DNA from: Vitrella brassicaformis CCMP3155
Taxonomy: Eukaryota; Protista; Chromerida
Assembly: GCA_001179505.1 (NCBI GenBank)
Contig: CDMY01000878.1
Span: forward strand, 179,395 to 243,394
Direction of reading: 5' to 3'
DNA length: 64,000 nucleotides
Shown here: positions 11,690 through 61,497 of the stretch, one piece after another
Layout of the letters: each line of letters starts with the position of its first letter
Position numbering within the stretch: position 1 is the stretch's first letter
Program-made: the position numbers and the translations under genes
Notes under the pieces: model-generated
The model's input: the letters and a program-made list of their open reading frames with translations, nothing else
Told to the model about the DNA's origin: nothing
The model's database searches: none

Positions 11690-12269
11690 TCAGATCCGCG
11701 TTTGATGCCTGTCCCTCGTCCAGTAGCTACGACCATCCCAGTGCTGCACCAGCAGCAGCAGCAGCCGCATTCGCAACAGCATCAGCATCATACCAAGAGC
11801 CACTACTAGCGTGGACAGGCTGACCCACCCACACCACACCACACAGGCGGCTCGTCACGTATTGGCTTTGCGTGTGCTACCAGGTCATCGCACTATGATG
11901 AGGGCGGACAGGACGCCCCGGTGTCGGCACACCTTGCTGCTGCTCCCAATGCTGTAGATGATAGGTGGGTGTCGATTGGCTGTCTCACTTCTCAGTGTCC
12001 ACATGTCTGTATGTGTGTGTATGTGTGTGTGTGTGTGCAGGGTGGGCGTGTCGTTGCGGGAGGCTCAGCTGCAGCGCGAGAATGAGGAGCTCAAGCGAAG
12101 GTACACACAATCCCATAATACAGCACATGAGAATGAAACGAAACTGTCCCGTTGGTCGGTCAGACTTGCCGAGCTCACCACCGCCCAGCAGCACCAGCAT
12201 CCTTCCCCCGGACATCCCTCTGGCCAGCTGATACATACATTTCACACACAATCAAACGTAGATCAGTGA
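11690..12269 (+). CDS. Hypothetical small protein with coiled-coil segment (5' end uncertain)
   Basis: GT-AG-bounded exons at about 11693, 11883, 12041-12101 (VSLREAQLQRENEELKR) and 12163-12269. Confidence 0.4.
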
Positions 12270-12282
12270 GTCAGTGAGTTAG

Positions 12283-15200
12283 TCAGACAGTCTCTTCCCC
12301 TTCGTCGGCCTTGTGTATGATCCCCGGCTGCTTGGTCGCGTGCATGAGCATCTTGTCGTACTCAAACGGCTGCTGGTCCTGCTGCCGCCACGACCGCACC
12401 ATCATCATGTCGTTCATTCTGACATACACAACACCAATGTCAACACCAATGACAACACACCATACAGCCTTCCACTCTCTCTTGGCTCACTCACCGAGAC
12501 ACGATCTTCAGCTTCGATAGCGTGTCCTTGCCCGCCGCCCCCACTGACGCCGAGCTCTTGCCGCTGCTCGCGCTGCTCGACGACGACTCAGACCTGCTCT
12601 TACCCGCCCTGACAGCCAGGCGGGATGACCCCGTCTTGGGCAGCCGTGTGGCCATCCTGCCCCAAGAGGAAGGGCTCTTGTCCCTTTGTGCTGCTGGGGA
12701 GGCGTCTTGGGTCCGGTCGTCGCTGAAGGCGATGTTGCGCCTGCTGGGGCTGATGTCGGCCTCGGGCTGTTGCTGTTGTTGTCTCGATGTGATGAGGATG
12801 CCTTTCTTGCTGCCCCTGTCGGCCAAGGCCATCTGTTGGTCGCTCGCGACATCGGCAGCGACGTGAAGCGGTGTGGGGGTGGGGCCGGGTGCGGGAGCGG
12901 GAGCGGGGACAAAAGGGGAGAGGGGGCTTGCGACAGATGACCGCACGCTGCTGCGGCGATGCATCGCCCGGCCGAACAGGGCAGCCATGGGGGGTGCTGC
13001 TGCTGCTGCTGCATCAGGTGTCTCCTGTTGTGCTGCTGCTGCTGCTGATGGGGCATAGCTTGCCTTGCGGCTGCTCTTTCTCCGCTGCCGCAACAGGTCA
13101 GAAAGCTTCCCCGGCTGCACCCCCAGCGTATCAGCAGGTCGCTTCCCCTTTGTGGCCAACACGGCAGCAGCGGTGACGACAGAAGGTCTCTTCTTCTCTT
13201 CGGCTGCCTCTGCTTCACCATGGCTGCTGCTCGCGCTGCTGCTGCTAGGTGAGGGGACGCCGGGGATGTCTGGCGGTGCCTGGGGTGCGTACCTGCGCGC
13301 CTCTGGTGTGGCGCCGGTCTTGACGGCTCTGGAGAACTTGGCGAGGGGCGACTGTGCCACGAGTATGTCGCAGGCCGGTGTGAAGCCCTGGCTGGCGCGG
13401 AGGTTGACGTGGCTCTGGTCGATGCGGAAAAAGCCAATGCCGATCTGTGTGAAAGCAAAAGGCATATCGGGGTGCGGTGGGTGCGGGCGAGTGTGTTAGG
13501 TGTACGTGTCTGTTGAGTGTTTCGACTCTCTGCCAGTCCTCCCAGAAGAGGAGACACGGACAGACGTGCCGAATCTCACGCTGCAGAAACACAGCCACAC
13601 TCAGCATCGCTGGGTACCTGAAATGCCGTCGCAGGAGACGTCAGGACATCAACCTCGCCATGCAGCCCCCCCGAACACACCTGTGGCACAATTCGACGAA
13701 GTCCACAAGATAGAATCGCTCGTAGGGCTCCAGCGTGAAGTCGATCCACGCCGCGTCGAAGGACTCGACGGAGTGGTTCTCATAGGCCTGGTAGAAGGTG
13801 TTGAGCTGCTGGGGGCCGATGTAGTGCACCGTCCATGAGCGGGAGATCTTCAGGATCGTGTAAAACATGAACTGGGCCAGCTCCATGAAGGACAGGCTGG
13901 CAAACATGAGCGTGGTGTACAGATACACATCCCATGTTGTCTCGCGGCCGGCACCTGAGACACACAGAGGAGACGGAGATTGGGAGCGAGGGAGTCATTT
14001 GCGTGTGGTTGACGGACCGGCGAGGTCGAAGAGTGCTTCAACGATTTTGTCGACGGCGTCTCTGTGGCTGCGGACGACGTGTATGATGCCCTTGGTGGGC
14101 ACCTCGGTTATCCAACCCACATGCAGACGCTTGCCGGTCTCCAGCTGGTGGATGCGCACAAAATGCCTGACATGACGGTGGTAGGGGGCGAGACATCTGG
14201 CAGATGCATGCCTATGTATGTGAATGCTTACTTGTACATATCGAATATGTGTCGCTGGGTGATTCCGAGGTCGTCAAAGAGCTCCTCCACCTGAACAGGA
14301 GATAAAAGGGAAAAGGACAGCCTTCTTCTCTTCTGTGCGCCGATAAGCGCCTGTTCTCTGTGGTCCTGAGTGCCTTGTCTGTTGGTCGGTGTGGGTGTGT
14401 GGATGGGTGCTCACCTCACCTCGGGGAGCGGGTGTGGCGGTGCTGATGTTCGGAAGAGCCAGAAGTATATGCCCACGCCCACCACCAGGAGCCCCACAAA
14501 CACCCCAATAATGATCAGCGAATCGTCTCTCGATACCTCCAGCTGCAACGGTCCTTCATCCTCCTCCTCTTCCTCCTCCTCCTCGACGCCCTGCATTAAG
14601 TCACGTCATGTCTTGTGTCTCGCCACTCTCTCGCTTACGTAGATGGCGTGGTCGCATTCCTTCGGCCACGGCCCCGCCAGTGTGGCGCATAGCGCTCTCG
14701 TGACTCCTTCAGGCGTCACTGGACCGGTGTATCGCCATCCATTGATCGCCACAGCAAAGGGGGCGGGATCATCAAGCCCCTCCCCGCCCAGCGCGTTGCC
14801 GTAGCGAATCCCGGGGCCCGATATCACCACTGACGCGCGCCAGTTGGTGCTGTTTCTGTCGTCCCTCTGTCTCCTGAGGAGCTCCTCCCCTCCCCCCGTG
14901 CCCGTGTCGGCCATGCATGTCTTCACCTCTGCGGCGATGAAGATGGCATTCTCGGCCAGCATCTCGCTGTTGCACCCCTCGCTGAAGTAGGGGAACACCA
15001 AGGCGGCCTCGTCATCGACGTCTTCAGCCGTCACGGCAGCCACTTCGGTGAAGGCCGTTGGGTCGGCACTGAGGGGGCAGTGGGTGGTGACGGCCTTGAG
15101 GTAGCGCCAGAAGGTCTCTGGGAAGGGGTGCAAGTCTCGCGGGTAGTCCTCTTCTGCTTTCTCTCCCTCGTCAGGGGCGGTGATATTTCTCGGCGGCTCG

Positions 15201-16688
15201 ACTGCGAAGGTTCTGGCAGGTACAGGTGCGGCTGCCACTGGGTTGGAGCGATCGAAGAGACACAGACGGCGCAAATCCTCCTCGACTACCTATTCAGGAC
15301 AGGGGGACATTCTGGTTGTTGTTGACGCCCTCTCTGTCCCAGTGACTGACTTACATGGCTACCTCAGCTCCGGTGATGGGTCCGTGTGCATCCGGATCAG
15401 CCGAGCAGTACTCGAGAGAGGTCTTGCCACCAGTAAATGACCAACAATAGTCTTGCACCTGCTCGAATTGAATGAACAACCATCACAGCGGTGAAAATGC
15501 CCTGCGCGCGCTCACGGTGAGCTCATTGGATTTGTCGCCCCGCTGGATCTGGTAGTGGAACTCCACAGCGACCAGCCCCCTCAGATACAGCATGGCGTCA
15601 GAAAACGGCTTCAGGAAGTGGGCAGCCTCAGGCGACCCCGAAGTGAGCCACACGTCGAGCTTGGCCGTGTCATACATCGGCCGGTCGCGCAGAAAGGACA
15701 GCTCCACCACGATGGAAGACTTGTCGACCACCACTGCGTTCGGGTCGCCCAGTATCTTACTCGACACGTCCCTTGCAGCGTCGAAGAGAATGCGGCCTTC
15801 CCTGTATGGCACCAAGACGGTCGGGAGAGACAGGGTCGACCCATAGCCATCATCAAAAGCCGTGAAGTGTCGGAACCCGTCAACCGTGGCGTTGACGGTG
15901 ACGGACCTCACCCGCCCGTCTGTCTCGTTGCCTGTGTACTCATACGCCTCGGTGGTGTCCGGGGCGTAGATGATAAGCACGTCGATGGCCTTGCTCTCAA
16001 TCGCGGCGACGGCGGCTTTCTTGGCGGCCACACAGCCCCCCATGGGCACGATGAGGAAGTTGAGGAGGAACACATCATCGCCCGCCTTCTGGGCAGAGGT
16101 CAGTGTCGCCTGCTCCGTGAGGTTGTAGGCGGTCTCCCTCCGAAGGTTGAGGGTGTCATAGTCGCTGGCAATGCAGTAAGACTCGCCCCGCGAGCGAAGG
16201 TAGAACAGCTGGCCCCACACCGACTTGCCGTAGTCATAGTGGCCGAAAGGGGCCGTGGATGCCGCCACTTGAAAGGGCGACATCGGAGGGGATGTGTCTT
16301 CTGGCGGCTCGGTGATTGGAGAGGCGGCAGGCGTGCTCGTTGATGTGTCATCGTCTGGCGGAGCAGCTGCCGGTGTGGGGGATGGTTGAATCGTGGATGT
16401 CGAAAGAGGCGGCTCTGTGCTTGTCGTGGCTGGCTCGTCCGTGGTTGATATTTCCGCGTTCGTGGTGGGCAGATCAGTGGTTGTCGGCGGCAAAGGTGTG
16501 GTCGTGGGCTCTATCTGGGCCTGGACGAGGCTGTCGATGACAGAATTGGGCTGCATGATACGCAGAGAAACGCAGTCATTCGCCGTGGATGAGGCGATGT
16601 GAAACAGCCGGTCGTAGAAGGGCTCCACTGAACTGGTCGATGGAAGCTGATACAGAAGGAGGATAAGGCGTAAAAAGGCAAACGACAT
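12283..16688 (-). CDS. VSR-like type I membrane protein (signal peptide, Thr/Pro stalk, PA domain, VSR thioredoxin-like region, TM) fused to a cytosolic degenerate EF-hand-like domain and disordered tail
   Basis: Signal peptide MSFAFLRLILLLYQLPSTSS. PA-like VPMGGCVAAKK...LSLPTVLV. VSR-type YCSADPDAHGPITGAE|VVEEDLRRLCLF and VAINGWRYTGPVTPEGVTRALCA. TM SLIIIGVFVGLLVVGVGIYFWLF. All downstream GT-AG junctions that I traced stay in frame to TGA at 12283. Confidence 0.75.
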
Positions 16689-16768
16689 CACCGATGGAAG
16701 AGGAGAAGGGGGCGCGCCCCCCGTGAGACGCCGTCGAGATTTGAGACGGCGTCCCTCGAAAGCAAAGG

Positions 16769-19320
16769 ATGTGGATTGTCGCCTTCCTCGTCACGGCTGC
16801 CTCTGCCACCGAAGCCAGACATCGACGGCTGCTGCCACCATTTGCCTTCTTCGTTCCTCGTCCCTCGCCCGTCGGTGCGAGCGGACGGGCGGCGTCATGG
16901 GCCAGAAGCGTCGCTCACTCAACTCCTTCAGCGAACGATGAAGTGCGTTGCGGAGTTCTCGTGAGTGCAGCTGCACCAACAGTCGAATCTCCTCTCTCTG
17001 TCTGTCGTCCGCCGCAAGGCGCATTGTCGCGCACCTCTCTGACTCGGTCAGAGGTTTGCAGAGCCGTTCGCCCGCCATTCACCGACCGATGGAGTCCGCC
17101 GCGAGTGCCGAAGAGAAGGGCCAGCGCCGTTGCGACGAGTGACCACCAGATGAGGGTACGGTACGCATGGCGAACCAGGCAGAGAATGGATCACGCTCAC
17201 AGGCATCGGAAGGGTGCATGCATACACAAACGGGCGTTTCGTTTGTATGTGTTGTCGACTGGTGGTCAGTATTGCAAGGATATGTTGGAGATGTTGGCCG
17301 ACAACAGGTTGGTCCTGCTCAAGGAGGTCGACAGAGGCGGGTAAGCCGCCGCCATAGAGCACAGCAATGTGCGTGTGGGAATGTGTGTATCCATGTGTGT
17401 GGGTGGTTGTACGTGAATGCAGCAATGCCATTGTGTTCAAGGTGAACAGTTTGTTGGTGCCAGGGGTCTTCCACGCGGTCAAAGCCATCCCAAGGGCCAA
17501 TTTCCTGTGAGCTGCACCAGCTCACCCACGCACCCCCTCACACCACTACTGCCTGTCTACCTGTCTGCCTGCATCCACTCACATTGTTGTTGCTGTGTGG
17601 GTATTCGTTCGTTCAGCGGCCCCGATGGCCTGTGCAGCGAGGCCGAGATCCTCGACAAGTACCGCCGCCTCTTCGCCCTTCGGCCCGGCGCCAACCTGTG
17701 CGAGATCCACACAGTACATCAGCATGGAATGGATAGACGGCGGGGATCGCGACGAGGGCCGCGTGAGCGAGGCCGACGCGCGGCATATCGCACCGAGGGC
17801 GCTGCAGGGGCTGCGACAACTACACAGCCACCAAGTAAGTGTAGTGGATGGATGGATGGATGGACGGGGGAGGGGGGACCCAAACACACCTTCAACCCGT
17901 ACATCCCTGTTCTGTCTGTGTGTGGCGTGACTGACAGCTCGCGCACGGGGACGTTTCATTGCGCAACATCATGCGCGACGGCCGACGGGTGGTGTTGGTG
18001 GACTTTGACAACATGGTAGTGTCATTACAAAACGTAAGTGTGTCGCGCACGGACGCACACATGGTGGAATGATTTTGCTCTCTTGTGTATGCGCATCCGT
18101 TCGTTCCTGCAGGCACCCGAATGTTACAATCGATTCGAATGCGGGCTATGGGTGTGGCCGTGTAAGCCGGCAATCAAATCTCCCTTCCAATACAGTATTC
18201 AATGCATACCCCAATACAATCTTGGGTGTGTGTGTATGTGTGTGTGTAGGCCATTGTCCAGCAGCGGGACACAGTGCTCCGCAGCCAGCACGCGCACCAA
18301 GAGGGCTCCGTCGGCTGGTGCAAGAAGGCGCCGGTTCCATTCGTGTCGGTGAGTGAGCGGAAGTCCCTCACTCTCTCTCTCACTGACTCGTTCACTTCAC
18401 CTTCATGTGCCTGTGCAGGATAAGTTCCTACGCGGCCCGAATTCCAACCCCATCAAGGCTTACACACTCGGTGCCAAGGGTAAGTGCAGTGCACCCCACA
18501 TTAACACATAAACAAACATCCGGTTGTGTGTTGGTGTGGGTGTCTGTTGCAGACGTCGCTGGCTATGCTAGCGCATCGTCTCCATTGGCTTGGCAGGGGT
18601 GGTCGCCGGGCGGCGGCTCTCCTCCCACGCGGCCACCGGGGGGCGGCTTCCCTCCCACGCGGCCGCCAGGGGTCGGCTCACCTCCGCTGCACCCGAACAC
18701 TACTCGCAAGTCGCACACGCGCAGGAACCCTCGCACTGGTACACACAACACTGCTCTCATGTGTACTGTACGGGACCGCTCTTGATGGGATGGATGTCCT
18801 TGTGTGTGTACCTTGGATGCCTGCAGTTGGTGTGTCGGTGAACTCAGGAACGACCCAGGCGCAGGCCAACGGAGAAAACTTCGCACCACACACACGGCTG
18901 GCCAGACAGACAGACAGACAGACAGGCAGGCAGACACGTACAACGCCTGCCAACCCCTACACGCCACATGCGACCGGCATGGGCGTGGCCGGCATCATGC
19001 CCCTGGGCAGCGGCGCTCAGCATCAGCAGCAGCAGCAGGGGCCGGTGGGGGGAGGGGGGCTGGGGGGAGGCCTGTCGGCTTCGGAGTGCCATATCCTGGA
19101 CACGCTCACTCAGACACTCACTCAGCTGGCCGCCGAGCAAATGGAGAGCGGCAGCATGGACCCCGGGGCCAAGCGGGCGGCCTTGCAGGCCAAACTCATG
19201 GAGCTGGCCAACCAGAGTGGGCTGACCCTCAACACGTCCCAGATGGACAAGATGATCCAGCAGGCACAGAACGACGACCAAACCAGATGGCATGGCACGG
19301 CACGGCACGGCACACACGTA
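16769..19320 (+). CDS. Protein kinase-like protein with N-terminal hydrophobic leader and Pro/Gly-rich C-terminal extension
   Basis: Exons encode LLKEVDRGG, FHAVKAIP (subdomain II), LAHGDVSLRNIM (catalytic loop), VVLVDFDN (DFG-like) and APE. The C-terminus has GGGSPPTRPP repeats and a helical end. The 3' end is uncertain. Confidence 0.65.
18598..18686 (+). repeat. Three imperfect 30-bp tandem repeats encoding PGGG(S/F)PPTRP
   Basis: Repeated unit ctcccacgcggcc(a/g)cc...ggggcggc is visible in the sequence. Confidence 0.7.
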
Positions 19321-59349: not shown

Positions 59350-59508
59350 ATGCGTGTGTGCCTTGCCTCCCTCGTGGCCGCTTGCCTTCATGCGAGCACG
59401 TGCCAGGCGGCCCAGATAGAGATCCATGAGCCCGACGAGCTCAAGGCGGCCTACCAGAGCACCAAGGGCGTCATCGAGGGAGCCACGGCCGTGTTTGGGA
59501 CGCCGGTA

Positions 59509-59539
<31 letters not shown>

Positions 59540-61497
59540 GAGGGGGGACAGAAGGCTGTGAGTGCATGCCCCCCACGACTCACTCATGTGTCCGGTGCGT
59601 GTGTCTTTTCGTGCAGTTTGAGGGTCAGGTGACGGTGGGCCGTGTCGTGTTCGCCGAGTCCAAGCTCAATCAGCAGTATTGCGACGCGGACGACTACGAC
59701 CTCCCACCGGTGCCCCAGTGCAACTGGACGACCAACTACACCTCTCACATTGTCCTCGTCACCCGCGGCCACTGCGCAGACGCACTCAAGGTCCGCATCG
59801 CCCAGGACGCCAAGCGCGCCTTCGCTGTCATAGTGGTGGACAGCGATCCCGGGGCGACTGAGGACGGTCTCAGACACGCCATGCTGACGGACGGTGAGAT
59901 GAATGACCACAGACAGAGGCAGATGCCCGCCTGCACAGCACAGAGGGTTTCATGTGCGCAAGGTAAGTCCTTCTGTGTGTGTGCAGATGGGTCTGGCGCG
60001 CACGTGAGGATTCCTTCTGTGCTAGTGACCCACTCGGCGGGTCAGCGCATCCTGGGTGCCCTCCGTCGCAATCAGACCGTCTTCGTCAAGATGGCTTGGG
60101 ACGCCCCTGTGGTGAGTGAGTGAATGATGCGATGCGATGCGGGCAGCCCAGCCGGCTCATATCGCATGGACGTTGTGCCCTTGGGTGCGGTGCAGGTTGA
60201 CAGCGTCTGCATGGACATGTGGATAACGCCTTCAATACCCAAGAGCCTGCACTTTGTCAGTGAGTTCTCACGCTACGCGCAGGCCCTCAAACACCGGGTG
60301 AGCCAAGGTGGCAAGCCACACACACGAGCCAGAACAGGACAGCACTCCCGAGCGAGGCGCACACGGACCTGTGTGTGTGTGTGTGTGTGTGTGTGACATG
60401 TCAGCTTGACTTTGAGCCGAGGTATTGGATCTTTTCTTTCGCCAAGGGCTCGCCTGACATGTGCCTTGACGATGAGGGCACGTACTGTGCGCTGACGCCT
60501 CGGCACGCCCCGTCCATCACTGGCAGAGACGTTGTCCATGAGTCGCTCCGGTGGGCCGAACAACGTTGACCTCCTGAAACCGGTGCATTTGTCAACTGTC
60601 GCTCGTCGCCCGCCCGTTCGTTGGTGCCTTCAGGCAACTGTGTCTGTGGGACGTGACGAAAACCCGTCTGGCAAATGGGGACAGCGCCTACTCGGAGGTG
60701 TGGTGGAAGTACGCCCAGGACCAGCCGCGCAGGTACCACACGGAAGGCAGGCAGGAAGACGCATGCCAGCCCAGCCAACCCCTCTGTTGCATCCATCTGC
60801 AACCATCAGGTGCAAGCCACGTGGCGATTTCAACGCAGATCCATCCACAACGTTCGGGCAAGAGTGCTCCTACCGATTGATGGCATCTGTGGGTGCACCT
60901 GTGGGCGACGTGCGGCAGTGCGTCGAGAGAGACGCCGCCGACCTGCTCGAGAAGCAGCGCACGTCCCTCGCCTGGTTCCCTATGGCCATTCGGATCAGCG
61001 AGATGCGCTACTTCGGCCCCTTGGACACCGAGCAGATCACACGCGTTATCTGCGCACATTTTCAGGACCCAAAGCCACAGGTCAGTGAGCGAGTCGATGG
61101 ATGGATGGATGGATGGCAGCAAAGAGCGAAGGGCATGGATGTGTGTGTGCCATGTGTGTAGGAGTGTAATATGGCATTGAGGCTGAAGGTCTTGCCTCTG
61201 GGAAAGGCGTCCTCGGGTGAGGTTTTCTGGCTGGCGCTGGTGGCGTCCTCTGCGACACTTATACTCGTAGGGCTTGCTGTCATTACCTGGTAAGCGCACA
61301 CACTCATCTGCGGCCAACGGACATAGACGTGCGTGTGGTGTGTTTTGTTCAGGTCGTGGGTGCGTGACATGCGCACCAAGCCACGGCTGCCGAGGACGGT
61401 TCAGCGCAGTGGCCGTGTGGTGGTGAGTGCTCTGGCTGCCGACGCCTCACACAGGCTGGTCCATCCACAGCTGCAACACGGGCAGCTCTATGTGTGA
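59350..61497 (+). CDS. VSR: Vacuolar sorting receptor-like protein (PA domain + VSR region + TM, short tail)
   Basis: Signal peptide MRVCLASLVAACLHASTCQA. ATAVFGTP, IVLVTRGHC..KVRIAQ, IPSVLV, YCALTP...TGRDVVHESLRQLCLW, YSEVWWKY and RYFGPLD..ITRVICA. TM FWLALVASSATLILVGLAVI. Confidence 0.88.

What the first reader, a model, noticed from the sequence alone, without database searches (positions are those of the whole stretch)
12283..16688. Putative receptor: VSR-like luminal module spliced in frame to a large cytosolic degenerate EF-hand-like domain
Seen: after the TM helix, donor CCC GAG|gtgagg (about 14420) joins the strong polypyrimidine acceptor ctgtccttttcccttttatctcctgttcag| (about 14291) in phase 0, giving ...RTSAPPHPLPE|VEELFDDLGITQRHIFDMYK|HFVRIHQ...ALFDLA|GAGRETTWDVYLYTTLMFASLSFMELAQFMF...FYLVDFVELCHR|YPAMLSVAVFLQREIRHVCPCLLFWEDW. 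A disordered tail of about 350 aa follows, ending at TGA 12283. Known: VSRs normally have only a short sorting-signal tail. Inference: the roughly 200-aa block resembles calcineurin-B/recoverin-like four-EF-hand proteins of protists, including the P..LQ..IR....FW ending, but the Ca-binding loops look eroded. The Thr/Pro mucin-like stalk before the PA domain is also atypical. This could be a cargo receptor repurposed for signalling.
Basis: partly seen in the sequence, partly recalled or inferred. Interest (0 to 1): 0.8.

Follow-up and report, generated by a model that had tools for sequence, protein, structure and literature searches.

The report
VSR-type receptor fused to pseudo-EF-hand domain
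This Vitrella gene joins a vacuolar-sorting-receptor-like luminal module and one membrane helix to a calcium-blind four-EF-hand domain from a previously undescribed alveolate family, but the only RNA contig available splices the two halves 5 bases out of frame.

Summary
The gene is real: 10 exons on the minus strand, 16688-12283. It is annotated in Vitrella brassicaformis as the uncharacterized protein CEM36161.1.

What holds up:
- An RNA-derived contig confirms all nine introns.
- The luminal part is a divergent VSR module. Pfam VSR_TRX scores above its cut-off. It aligns at E 1e-19 to a canonical PA+VSR_TRX paralogue in the same genome.
- The cytosolic block is a 237-position domain with no Pfam model. 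AlphaFold gives pLDDT 90. Its best structural matches are AtCBL2, CHP1, CIB2, NCS-1, KChIP and calcineurin B (Z up to 9.9). None of 52 family members has a Ca-binding loop pattern.
- About 86 relatives, from dinoflagellates and Amoebophrya where named, are stand-alone proteins. They carry a short basic, often Cys-bearing lead where Vitrella has the membrane helix.
- A transcript assigned to the apicomplexan Eleutheroschizon encodes luminal end, membrane helix and domain in one ORF.

The caveat:
- The donor is a tandem GTGAG|GTGAG.
- That shifts the frame and stops at 14110, giving a 737-aa short-tailed product.
- I did not see the in-frame isoform in RNA. It is inferred from conservation.

The function is inferred.

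The parts
15516..16688 (-). Exon 1. It holds ATG 16688 and a hydrophobic N-terminal signal-like segment (about 16688-16620), then a Thr/Pro/Ser-rich low-complexity stretch (about 16523-16269). From about 16259 it encodes the PA-like domain and the start of the VSR thioredoxin-like domain.
   Evidence: The RNA contig reaches 16708 and splices at 15516|15458. Alignment to the PA+VSR_TRX paralogue starts at P0001 residue 100. The annotated product P0001 starts 44 codons later at an internal Met.
15363..15458 (-). Exon 2, inside the VSR_TRX-like domain (the ..EYCSADPD.. segment).
   Evidence: Junctions come from the RNA contig. The Pfam VSR_TRX match on P0001 residues 313-395 spans exons 1-3.
14639..15289 (-). 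Exon 3, the rest of the VSR_TRX-like luminal domain. No EGF repeats follow it.
   Evidence: Pfam VSR_TRX weak stretch, profile 130-183. BLASTP to the paralogue. Homology to the luminal end of the Eleutheroschizon transcript.
14415..14590 (-). Exon 4 as seen in RNA (176 nt). It holds an acidic linker, the TM helix (14518-14453) and the start of the family motif SAPPHPLPE(V).
   Evidence: Record coordinates of contig 9 require 176 nt. Kyte-Doolittle 19-residue maximum is 2.79.
14410..14419 (-). Tandem 5' splice sites GTGAG|GTGAG(C). The donor at 14419 is in frame. The donor at 14414 is seen in RNA and shifts the frame by 5 nt.
14108..14110 (-). TAA that ends the luminal reading frame in the RNA-observed isoform. 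The product is 737 aa with a cytosolic tail of about 51 aa.
13355..14446 (-). Pseudo four-EF-hand domain (P0001 645-881). It is encoded by the end of exon 4, exons 5 (14290-14232), 6 (14166-14018), 7 (13954-13681) and 8 (13617-13506), and the start of exon 9.
   Evidence: Local HMM envelope. AlphaFold pLDDT 90. Fold matches. Junctions.
12495..13444 (-). Exon 9. It holds the end of the domain, then a low-complexity, probably disordered tail rich in Ala, Ser, Gln and Pro.
   Evidence: Junctions. No Pfam match. The Ala/Gln repeat at about 12990-13053 attracts unrelated contigs (table 7).
12283..12418 (-). Exon 10. It holds the conserved C-terminal family motif (..MMVRSWRQQ.., 12408-12385), a YDKM sequence, and the stop at 12285-12283.
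   Evidence: Motif scan across the family. Junction 12495|12418.

Best explanation
This is a genuine fusion gene for a type I membrane protein.

The N-terminal half faces the lumen. It has a signal-like segment, a Thr/Pro-rich extension, and a divergent vacuolar-sorting-receptor module made of a PA-like domain and a VSR thioredoxin-like domain, with no EGF repeats. A single TM helix follows.

Five residues after the helix the protein continues as a complete member of a Pfam-less family. Where members are named, they come from dinoflagellates, Amoebophrya, Vitrella and Eleutheroschizon. Each member has a compact four-EF-hand domain of the CBL/CHP/CIB/NCS/calcineurin-B type with no Ca-binding ligands, a variable disordered linker, and a short conserved C-terminal motif.

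In stand-alone relatives the domain is preceded by a short basic amphipathic lead that often carries a Cys. I infer this is a lipid or electrostatic membrane anchor. In Vitrella and Eleutheroschizon the TM helix of the receptor takes that place.

Inferred mechanism: the luminal module binds a ligand or cargo in the endomembrane system. The pseudo-EF-hand domain is held against the cytosolic face by the PPxPxPEV linker. It acts as a Ca-independent docking module for an amphipathic helix, either from a partner or from its own C-terminal motif. This is how CHP1, CBLs, KChIPs and CIB2 work on membrane proteins.

The two halves are joined at tandem donors 5 nt apart. Only the upstream donor gives the conserved protein. 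The downstream donor, seen in RNA, gives a truncated short-tailed receptor or a decay substrate.
For: Gene structure:
- All nine introns are in one RNA contig.

Luminal module:
- Pfam VSR_TRX scores 28.5-32 bits against a cut-off of 27.
- BLASTP gives E 1e-19 over about 295 residues to a Vitrella paralogue with Pfam PA (5e-9) and VSR_TRX (4e-17).

Cytosolic domain and family:
- The whole-library HMMER search found 87 proteins.
- The domain covers 237 positions.
- AlphaFold gives pLDDT 90 and pTM 0.86.
- Foldseek's top hits are CHP1, AtCBL2, NCS-1 and KChIP1.
- VIA gives Z 9.9 with 165-168 residues aligned.
- An independent search of 48,161 chains lists EF-hand proteins in its top ranks and in nearly all of its 50 rows.
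- The best Atlas match is an EF-hand cluster, TM 0.61.
- 0 of 52 members carry an EF loop pattern.

Fusion:
- The family motif PPxPxPEV..L..L.IT.R aligns across the in-frame junction.
- The Eleutheroschizon transcript ORF covers luminal end, TM and domain in a single HSP, E 1e-46.
- The two TM-fused members group together, SH-aLRT 97.
- The C-terminal motif is conserved in exon 10.
- Only the fused members have a TM-grade segment, and 37 of 59 sequences with a complete N-terminus have a Cys just before the motif.
- The observed mRNA cannot make the domain otherwise. The EF frame has no ATG before 14239, and 30 ATGs lie upstream.
Against: The only spliced RNA contig I could lay uses the frame-shifting donor. 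Contigs cannot show isoform ratios, so the in-frame mRNA is not directly observed in Vitrella.

Fold similarity is moderate. Z is 9.9 and Foldseek E is 7e-3, which is within the range where helical proteins can match by arrangement. A sequence profile found no EF-hand protein in the PDB, and Pfam EF-hand models are silent.

The organism of the second fused sequence is known only from its accession prefix in a paper's table. The transcriptome could contain other organisms.

No experiment bears on ligand, partner or location.
Confidence: 0.72

Rival explanations
1. The main product in Vitrella is the 737-aa short-tailed VSR-like receptor made from the 14414 donor. The long fusion is at most a minor isoform. 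The downstream exons then act mostly as 3' UTR, or as a regulated unproductive or alternative tail.
For: The RNA contig shows only this junction. Classic VSRs have short tails (established knowledge of plant BP-80/VSR). The two donors are equal from -3 to +5, so neither is obviously favoured.
Against: About 560 codons stay open across five introns with matching phases. They retain both family signatures. The frameshifted 38-aa tail matches nothing. A stop followed by four introns is an unusual layout for a main product. The annotation and the Eleutheroschizon ORF are in frame.
Confidence: 0.17
2. The EF-hand-like protein is made from an internal promoter. The ATG at 14596, inside intron 3, is in frame with exon 4. 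It would give a TM-anchored pseudo-EF-hand protein with only an acidic 24-residue luminal stub, separate from the VSR-like product.
For: ORF 14411-14596 starts with that ATG. Such a product would mimic the stand-alone family layout of a short lead followed by the domain.
Against: No contig starts there, and intron 3 is spliced out in the RNA contig. This product would still need the 14419 donor. The Eleutheroschizon ORF carries more than 100 luminal residues upstream of the TM helix.
Confidence: 0.07
3. The fusion is an annotation or assembly artefact that merges two neighbouring genes.
For: Most family members are stand-alone. The RNA contig is itself chimeric with a convergent gene at its 3' end.
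Against: A GT..AG splice joins the TM exon to the first domain exon in RNA. The start of family homology (SAPPHPLPE) lies inside the TM exon, not at an exon border. DNA contigs from another run match the window without differences.
Confidence: 0.04

Closest known systems
Plant-type vacuolar sorting receptors (BP-80 / AtVSR1 family)
   Same: Type I topology. PA domain followed by the VSR thioredoxin-like domain (Pfam PF25011 above cut-off), then a single TM helix. Canonical paralogues exist in the same genome.
   Different: There are no EGF repeats. The PA domain is too divergent for Pfam PA. It has an N-terminal Thr/Pro-rich extension. Instead of a tail of about 37 residues with a YMPL-type signal, the in-frame tail is about 610 residues and contains a folded domain.
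Four-EF-hand adaptor proteins: CBL/SOS3, CHP1/2, CIB1-3, NCS/recoverin/KChIP, calcineurin B
   Same: The predicted fold covers the whole four-EF-hand unit (Z 7-9.9, 145-172 residues aligned). It sits close to the membrane. The known proteins are usually lipid-anchored and clamp an amphipathic helix of a membrane protein or kinase (established knowledge).
   Different: There is no detectable sequence relationship. No Ca-ligand pattern occurs in any of the four loops of any member. It has a conserved N-terminal PPxPxPEV motif and extra C-terminal elements. Here it is covalently attached to a receptor's TM helix.
RMR proteins (PA domain - TM - cytosolic RING-H2)
   Same: A PA-domain luminal module is coupled through one TM helix to a folded cytosolic domain. 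This is a precedent for PA receptors with functional tails (from my own knowledge, not tested here).
   Different: RMRs lack the VSR_TRX domain and carry a RING ubiquitin-ligase domain, not an EF-hand-like one.

Membership tests
Vacuolar sorting receptor (VSR/BP-80) | VSR thioredoxin-like central domain (Pfam PF25011) | tested here: met
   28.5 bits on P0001 and 32 bits on its residues 1-640, against a cut-off of 27. Exon 3 alone scores 20.3 bits.
Vacuolar sorting receptor (VSR/BP-80) | N-terminal PA domain | tested here: inconclusive
   Pfam PA does not match. The region does align (28% identity, E 1e-19 for the whole module) to a Vitrella paralogue whose equivalent stretch matches Pfam PA at 5e-9. 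No structure was predicted for it.
Vacuolar sorting receptor (VSR/BP-80) | EGF repeats between the central domain and the TM helix | tested here: not met
   No EGF family appears in the Pfam scans. The TRX-like match runs to the end of exon 3, and an acidic linker leads straight into the TM helix.
Vacuolar sorting receptor (VSR/BP-80) | Single TM helix and short cytosolic tail with a tyrosine sorting signal | tested here: inconclusive
   The TM helix is present. The tail is about 610 aa in the in-frame isoform and about 51 aa in the RNA-observed isoform. YDKM near the C-terminus fits YxxPhi but was not tested.
EF-hand superfamily, four-EF-hand CBL/CHP/NCS/CNB type | Two pairs of helix-loop-helix units with short paired strands, in a compact globule | tested here: met
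   The AlphaFold model shows helix-strand-helix four times. The top ranks of three independent structure searches, and nearly all listed rows in the PDB searches, are EF-hand proteins, and the best cover the full unit.
EF-hand superfamily, four-EF-hand CBL/CHP/NCS/CNB type | Canonical 12-residue Ca-binding loop (acidic ligands at positions 1, 3, 5, 12) | tested here: not met
Column make-up of the four loops lacks the ligands.
EF-hand superfamily, four-EF-hand CBL/CHP/NCS/CNB type | Sequence-level match to EF-hand models or solved EF-hand proteins | tested here: not met
   There was no Pfam EF-hand hit on exons, on P0001 or on 9 homologues. A profile of 52 members found no EF-hand chain in the PDB sequences.
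Pfam-less pseudo-EF-hand family found here (members named so far: dinoflagellates, Amoebophrya, Vitrella, Eleutheroschizon) | PPxPxPEV lead motif, 237-position domain with invariant W, E, Q, P, W, and the C-terminal ..F-I-R-K-S-R-type motif | tested here: met
   P0001 645-881 scores 269 bits against the family HMM. The invariant columns are shared. The C-terminal motif variant VRSWR is shared with Eleutheroschizon.

The most novel reading that the evidence does not exclude
The GTGAG|GTGAG tandem donor is a deliberate 5-nt frame switch. One choice makes a conventional short-tailed sorting receptor, or an unproductive mRNA. The other attaches a membrane-apposed, Ca-independent pseudo-EF-hand adaptor with its own C-terminal docking helix. 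This would turn a VSR-type cargo receptor into a transmembrane coupling device between luminal ligand binding and cytosolic partners. The arrangement would have been inherited from the common ancestor of chromerids and apicomplexans.
Probability: 0.2. Interest if true: 0.75.

Novelty: new variant of a known kind. Interest (0 to 1): 0.58.

Why it matters
VSR-type receptors are known as cargo receptors with short sorting tails. A version with a folded adaptor domain on the cytosolic side, shared by a chromerid and an apicomplexan-assigned transcript, suggests a different way of using this receptor in relatives of the malaria and Toxoplasma parasites.

It also exposes a conserved family with no Pfam model and no name in any source I looked up. 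It has about 86 clusters at 50% identity and is abundant in dinoflagellate transcriptomes. Its fold links it to the CBL/CHP/CIB/NCS adaptors but without calcium binding.

Finally, it is a concrete case where the annotated frame and the assembled transcript disagree at a tandem donor. That bears on how far gene models in this genome can be trusted.

Tried and rejected
Searches that found nothing useful:
- Pfam and NCBIfam on single exons gave nothing for the cytosolic exons.
- Word-index protein searches were blank or found only the query's own entry, for exon 7, for P0001 100-600 and for P0089 100-480. These blanks carry little weight because of the tool's length window and its need for shared words.
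- The ESM Atlas feature search on exon 7 gave no usable hit.
- phmmer of exons 1 and 3 against PDB sequences gave only compositional noise, such as mucin and FOXA1.
- The own-genome search found no paralogue of the domain.
- Literature searches for a VSR plus EF-hand combination, or for Vitrella VSRs, found nothing relevant.

Other results:
- AlphaFold of a full-length stand-alone member (P0021) gave the C-terminal motif helix pLDDT 72-79. That is only a hint of docking, because the tool returns no contacts.

Steps left out or limited:
- Exons were searched by reference. The full-length sequence used was the public product P0001 that the search returned.
- In two scripts exons were concatenated only for frame bookkeeping, and only short peptides were printed.
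- The caps on read laying and the look-up of sequencing runs prevented a second look at runs X1 and X3.
Full report
**Origin of the window.** The window is contig C878:179395-243394 of a 72.7-Mb, 1064-contig assembly. The annotated product of the locus is CEM36161.1 / A0A0G4GYE8, an uncharacterized protein of Vitrella brassicaformis CCMP3155 (P0001).

**Gene structure.** Reading the minus strand and tracking phases gives ten exons:

| Exon | Coordinates |
|---|---|
| 1 | 16688-15516 |
| 2 | 15458-15363 |
| 3 | 15289-14639 |
| 4 | 14590-14415 or 14590-14420 |
| 5 | 14290-14232 |
| 6 | 14166-14018 |
| 7 | 13954-13681 |
| 8 | 13617-13506 |
| 9 | 13444-12495 |
| 10 | 12418-12283 |

Of the public runs that hold the stretch, X4 behaves as RNA. 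Its 3945-nt contig 9 covers 12162-16708 with every intron removed, and all introns are GT..AG on the minus strand. X2 and X5 are unspliced and identical to the window.

**The decisive junction.** The sequence after the TM helix is CCC GAG GTGAG GTGAGC.
- The RNA contig skips 124 nt, not 129. Its record coordinates leave 235 letters, not 230, for exons 4 plus 5. So it splices after the first GTGAG, at 14415.
- The two donors are identical from -3 to +5.
- With the observed junction the luminal frame reads ..HPLPEVR, then 38 unrelated residues, then TAA at 14110-14108. The product is 737 aa.
- In the observed mRNA the downstream frame has no ATG before 14239. That position is already inside the conserved domain, and 30 ATG triplets lie upstream. 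The observed mRNA therefore cannot deliver the intact domain.
- Logan contigs drop minor variants. The contig shows that the frame-shifting isoform exists. It does not show that the in-frame one is absent.

**Is the downstream frame translated as a fusion?** Several independent lines say yes.
1. About 560 codons stay open through five phase-matched introns.
2. A whole-library HMMER search with exon 7 found 87 proteins. Apart from P0001 they are mostly stand-alone proteins of 430-580 aa with the match near residue 100.
3. Their homology to Vitrella covers 237 positions (P0001 645-881). It begins inside exon 4, five residues after the TM helix. The family motif G/S-x-P-P-x-P-x-x-E-V..L..L.(I/M)T.R aligns with SAPPHPLPE|VEELFDDLGITQRH, so it runs across the in-frame junction.
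4. A second family signature sits about 40 residues from the C-terminus (E-L-D/E-F-I-R-K-S-R). It recurs in exon 10 as MMVRSWRQQ.
5. P0024 and P0089 are TransDecoder ORFs of TSA GHVT01. A published table assigns that prefix to the apicomplexan Eleutheroschizon duboscqi (PMC10304595). They encode the end of the luminal domain, a TM helix, APPQLAPKV and the domain in a single ORF. BLASTP against P0001 430-910 gives one HSP from the luminal part through the TM helix to the end of the domain, E 1e-46. They also share the VRSWR variant of the C-terminal motif.
6. In a quick ML tree of 52 domains the two TM-fused members are sisters, SH-aLRT 97. The branches are long and the careful search was not finished.

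I conclude that the fusion protein is under selection and that the 14419 donor must be used in some transcripts, although I did not see them.

**Luminal half.**
- Exon-wise Pfam gave only a sub-threshold VSR_TRX hit.
- On the public full-length product, PF25011 passes its cut-off: 28.5 bits, or 32 bits on residues 1-640.
- The genome holds other VSR_TRX loci.
- The ORF at C383 carries Pfam PA (5e-9) and VSR_TRX (4e-17). It aligns with P0001 100-392 at E 1e-19 and 28% identity, from the conserved N-terminal ..TA.FG.. segment through the PA region to ..DPD..G.ITG..VV.EDLR.LCLF.
- There are no EGF repeats.
- The ATG at 16688 lies 44 codons upstream of the annotated start and adds a hydrophobic signal-like segment. 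The RNA contig extends past it to 16708.
- The Thr/Pro/Ser-rich stretch is real, but it lies N-terminal of the PA domain.

**Cytosolic domain.**
- Pfam, NCBIfam, a family profile against PDB sequences and the Atlas feature search gave nothing.
- AlphaFold2 on a 52-sequence alignment (A1) gave pLDDT 90 and pTM 0.86. The model has four helix / short strand / helix units.
- Foldseek against the PDB listed CHP1, AtCBL2, NCS-1, KChIP1, hippocalcin, SOS3, CIB2 and calcineurin B. E-values start at 7e-3, probability is 0.9-1.0 for most of these, and TM by target is up to 0.60.
- VIA-align gave Z 9.9 for AtCBL2 and CHP1, with 165-168 of about 187 residues aligned at rmsd 3.8-3.9.
- The Foldseek-independent scan of 48,161 chains returned EF-hand proteins at the top and in nearly all of its 50 rows.
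- The best ESM Atlas cluster is an EF-hand protein, TM 0.61.
- The tool warns that Z below about 13 can be a common helical arrangement. I rely on the homogeneity of the lists and on full-domain coverage.
- The loops have none of the acidic ligands. 0 of 52 members match an EF-loop pattern.
Membership by sequence criteria is not met.

**Family context.**
- Named members come from Amoebophrya, Pelagodinium, Biecheleria, Prorocentrum, an unnamed dinoflagellate and MMETSP or marine metatranscriptomes.
- Vitrella has a single copy.
- Stand-alone members carry a lead of 5-70 residues before the motif. It is net basic, predicted helical in P0021, and often has R-(R/K)-C-(L/I)-G. 37 of 59 sequences with a complete N-terminus have a Cys in the last 22 residues before the motif.
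- Only the Vitrella and Eleutheroschizon proteins have a TM-grade hydrophobic segment.
- I infer, without test, that the lead is a polybasic or S-acylated membrane anchor. In the fused lineage the receptor's TM helix replaced it.
- The PPxPxPEV segment is modelled with pLDDT 87-94 although it is non-helical. This suggests it packs on the domain and holds it close to the membrane.

**Mechanism (inferred).** The known four-EF-hand adaptors clamp an amphipathic helix of a membrane protein or kinase in a hydrophobic groove, and they are themselves membrane-tethered (established knowledge for CHP1-NHE1, CBL-CIPK, KChIP-Kv4 and CIB2-TMC1). By analogy, this domain would be a Ca-independent docking module at the cytosolic face of a VSR-type receptor. 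The conserved C-terminal motif is a candidate intramolecular or trans ligand. Its helix reaches pLDDT 72-79 in the full-length model of P0021, which is a weak hint. Nothing here shows signalling.

**Verdict.** The fusion is very probably real and conserved beyond Vitrella. The finding is a new variant of a known receptor type, plus an undescribed pseudo-EF-hand family. It is of moderate interest. The decisive open question is cheap to answer: count the reads across the two junctions.

Noticed in passing
window 11958-12283 (+ strand), intron 12099-12161: A convergent plus-strand gene (coiled-coil-like ..LQRENEELKRR..) has a GT..AG intron at 12099-12161. Its 3' end overlaps the 3' end of the receptor gene. 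RNA contig 9 of run X4 merges the two transcripts.
   Followed up: partly
window 59350-60120 (+): A 257-aa ORF has a clear Pfam PA domain (E 3.6e-9). It lies about 43 kb from the receptor gene and is weakly similar to its PA region (E 0.06, with one TGA in the wider match). It may be a second PA-domain receptor-type gene on the same contig.
   Followed up: partly
window 16556-16688 (-): The public model CEM36161.1 starts at an internal Met (MQPNSV..). The upstream in-frame ATG at 16688 adds 44 residues with a signal-peptide-like hydrophobic core, and the RNA contig covers it.
   Followed up: yes
window 16720-17078 (-): A separate low-depth RNA contig (16720-16994) covers a 95-aa basic ORF (16791-17078) just upstream of the start codon. 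It could be a long 5' UTR with a uORF or the end of another gene.
   Followed up: no
window 12990-13053: A GCA/GCT/CAG-type repeat encoding Ala/Gln runs in the tail attracts many unrelated contigs with loose ends in all runs. Depth there is inflated and means nothing.
   Followed up: no
P0033 (744 aa), P0020 (499 aa), P0060 (604 aa): Some stand-alone family members carry extra parts. P0033 has a C2 domain (E 7e-5). P0020 has a weak WW match, below its cut-off. P0060 has two hydrophobic Cys-rich segments upstream of the domain. C2 and the hydrophobic segments fit a membrane-associated role.
   Followed up: no
G000 C255:99585-100154, C383:55344-55931, C268, C270, C1040: Vitrella has at least two canonical PA+VSR_TRX loci and three weaker VSR_TRX matches. 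The receptor studied here is the divergent member of a small VSR gene family.
   Followed up: partly
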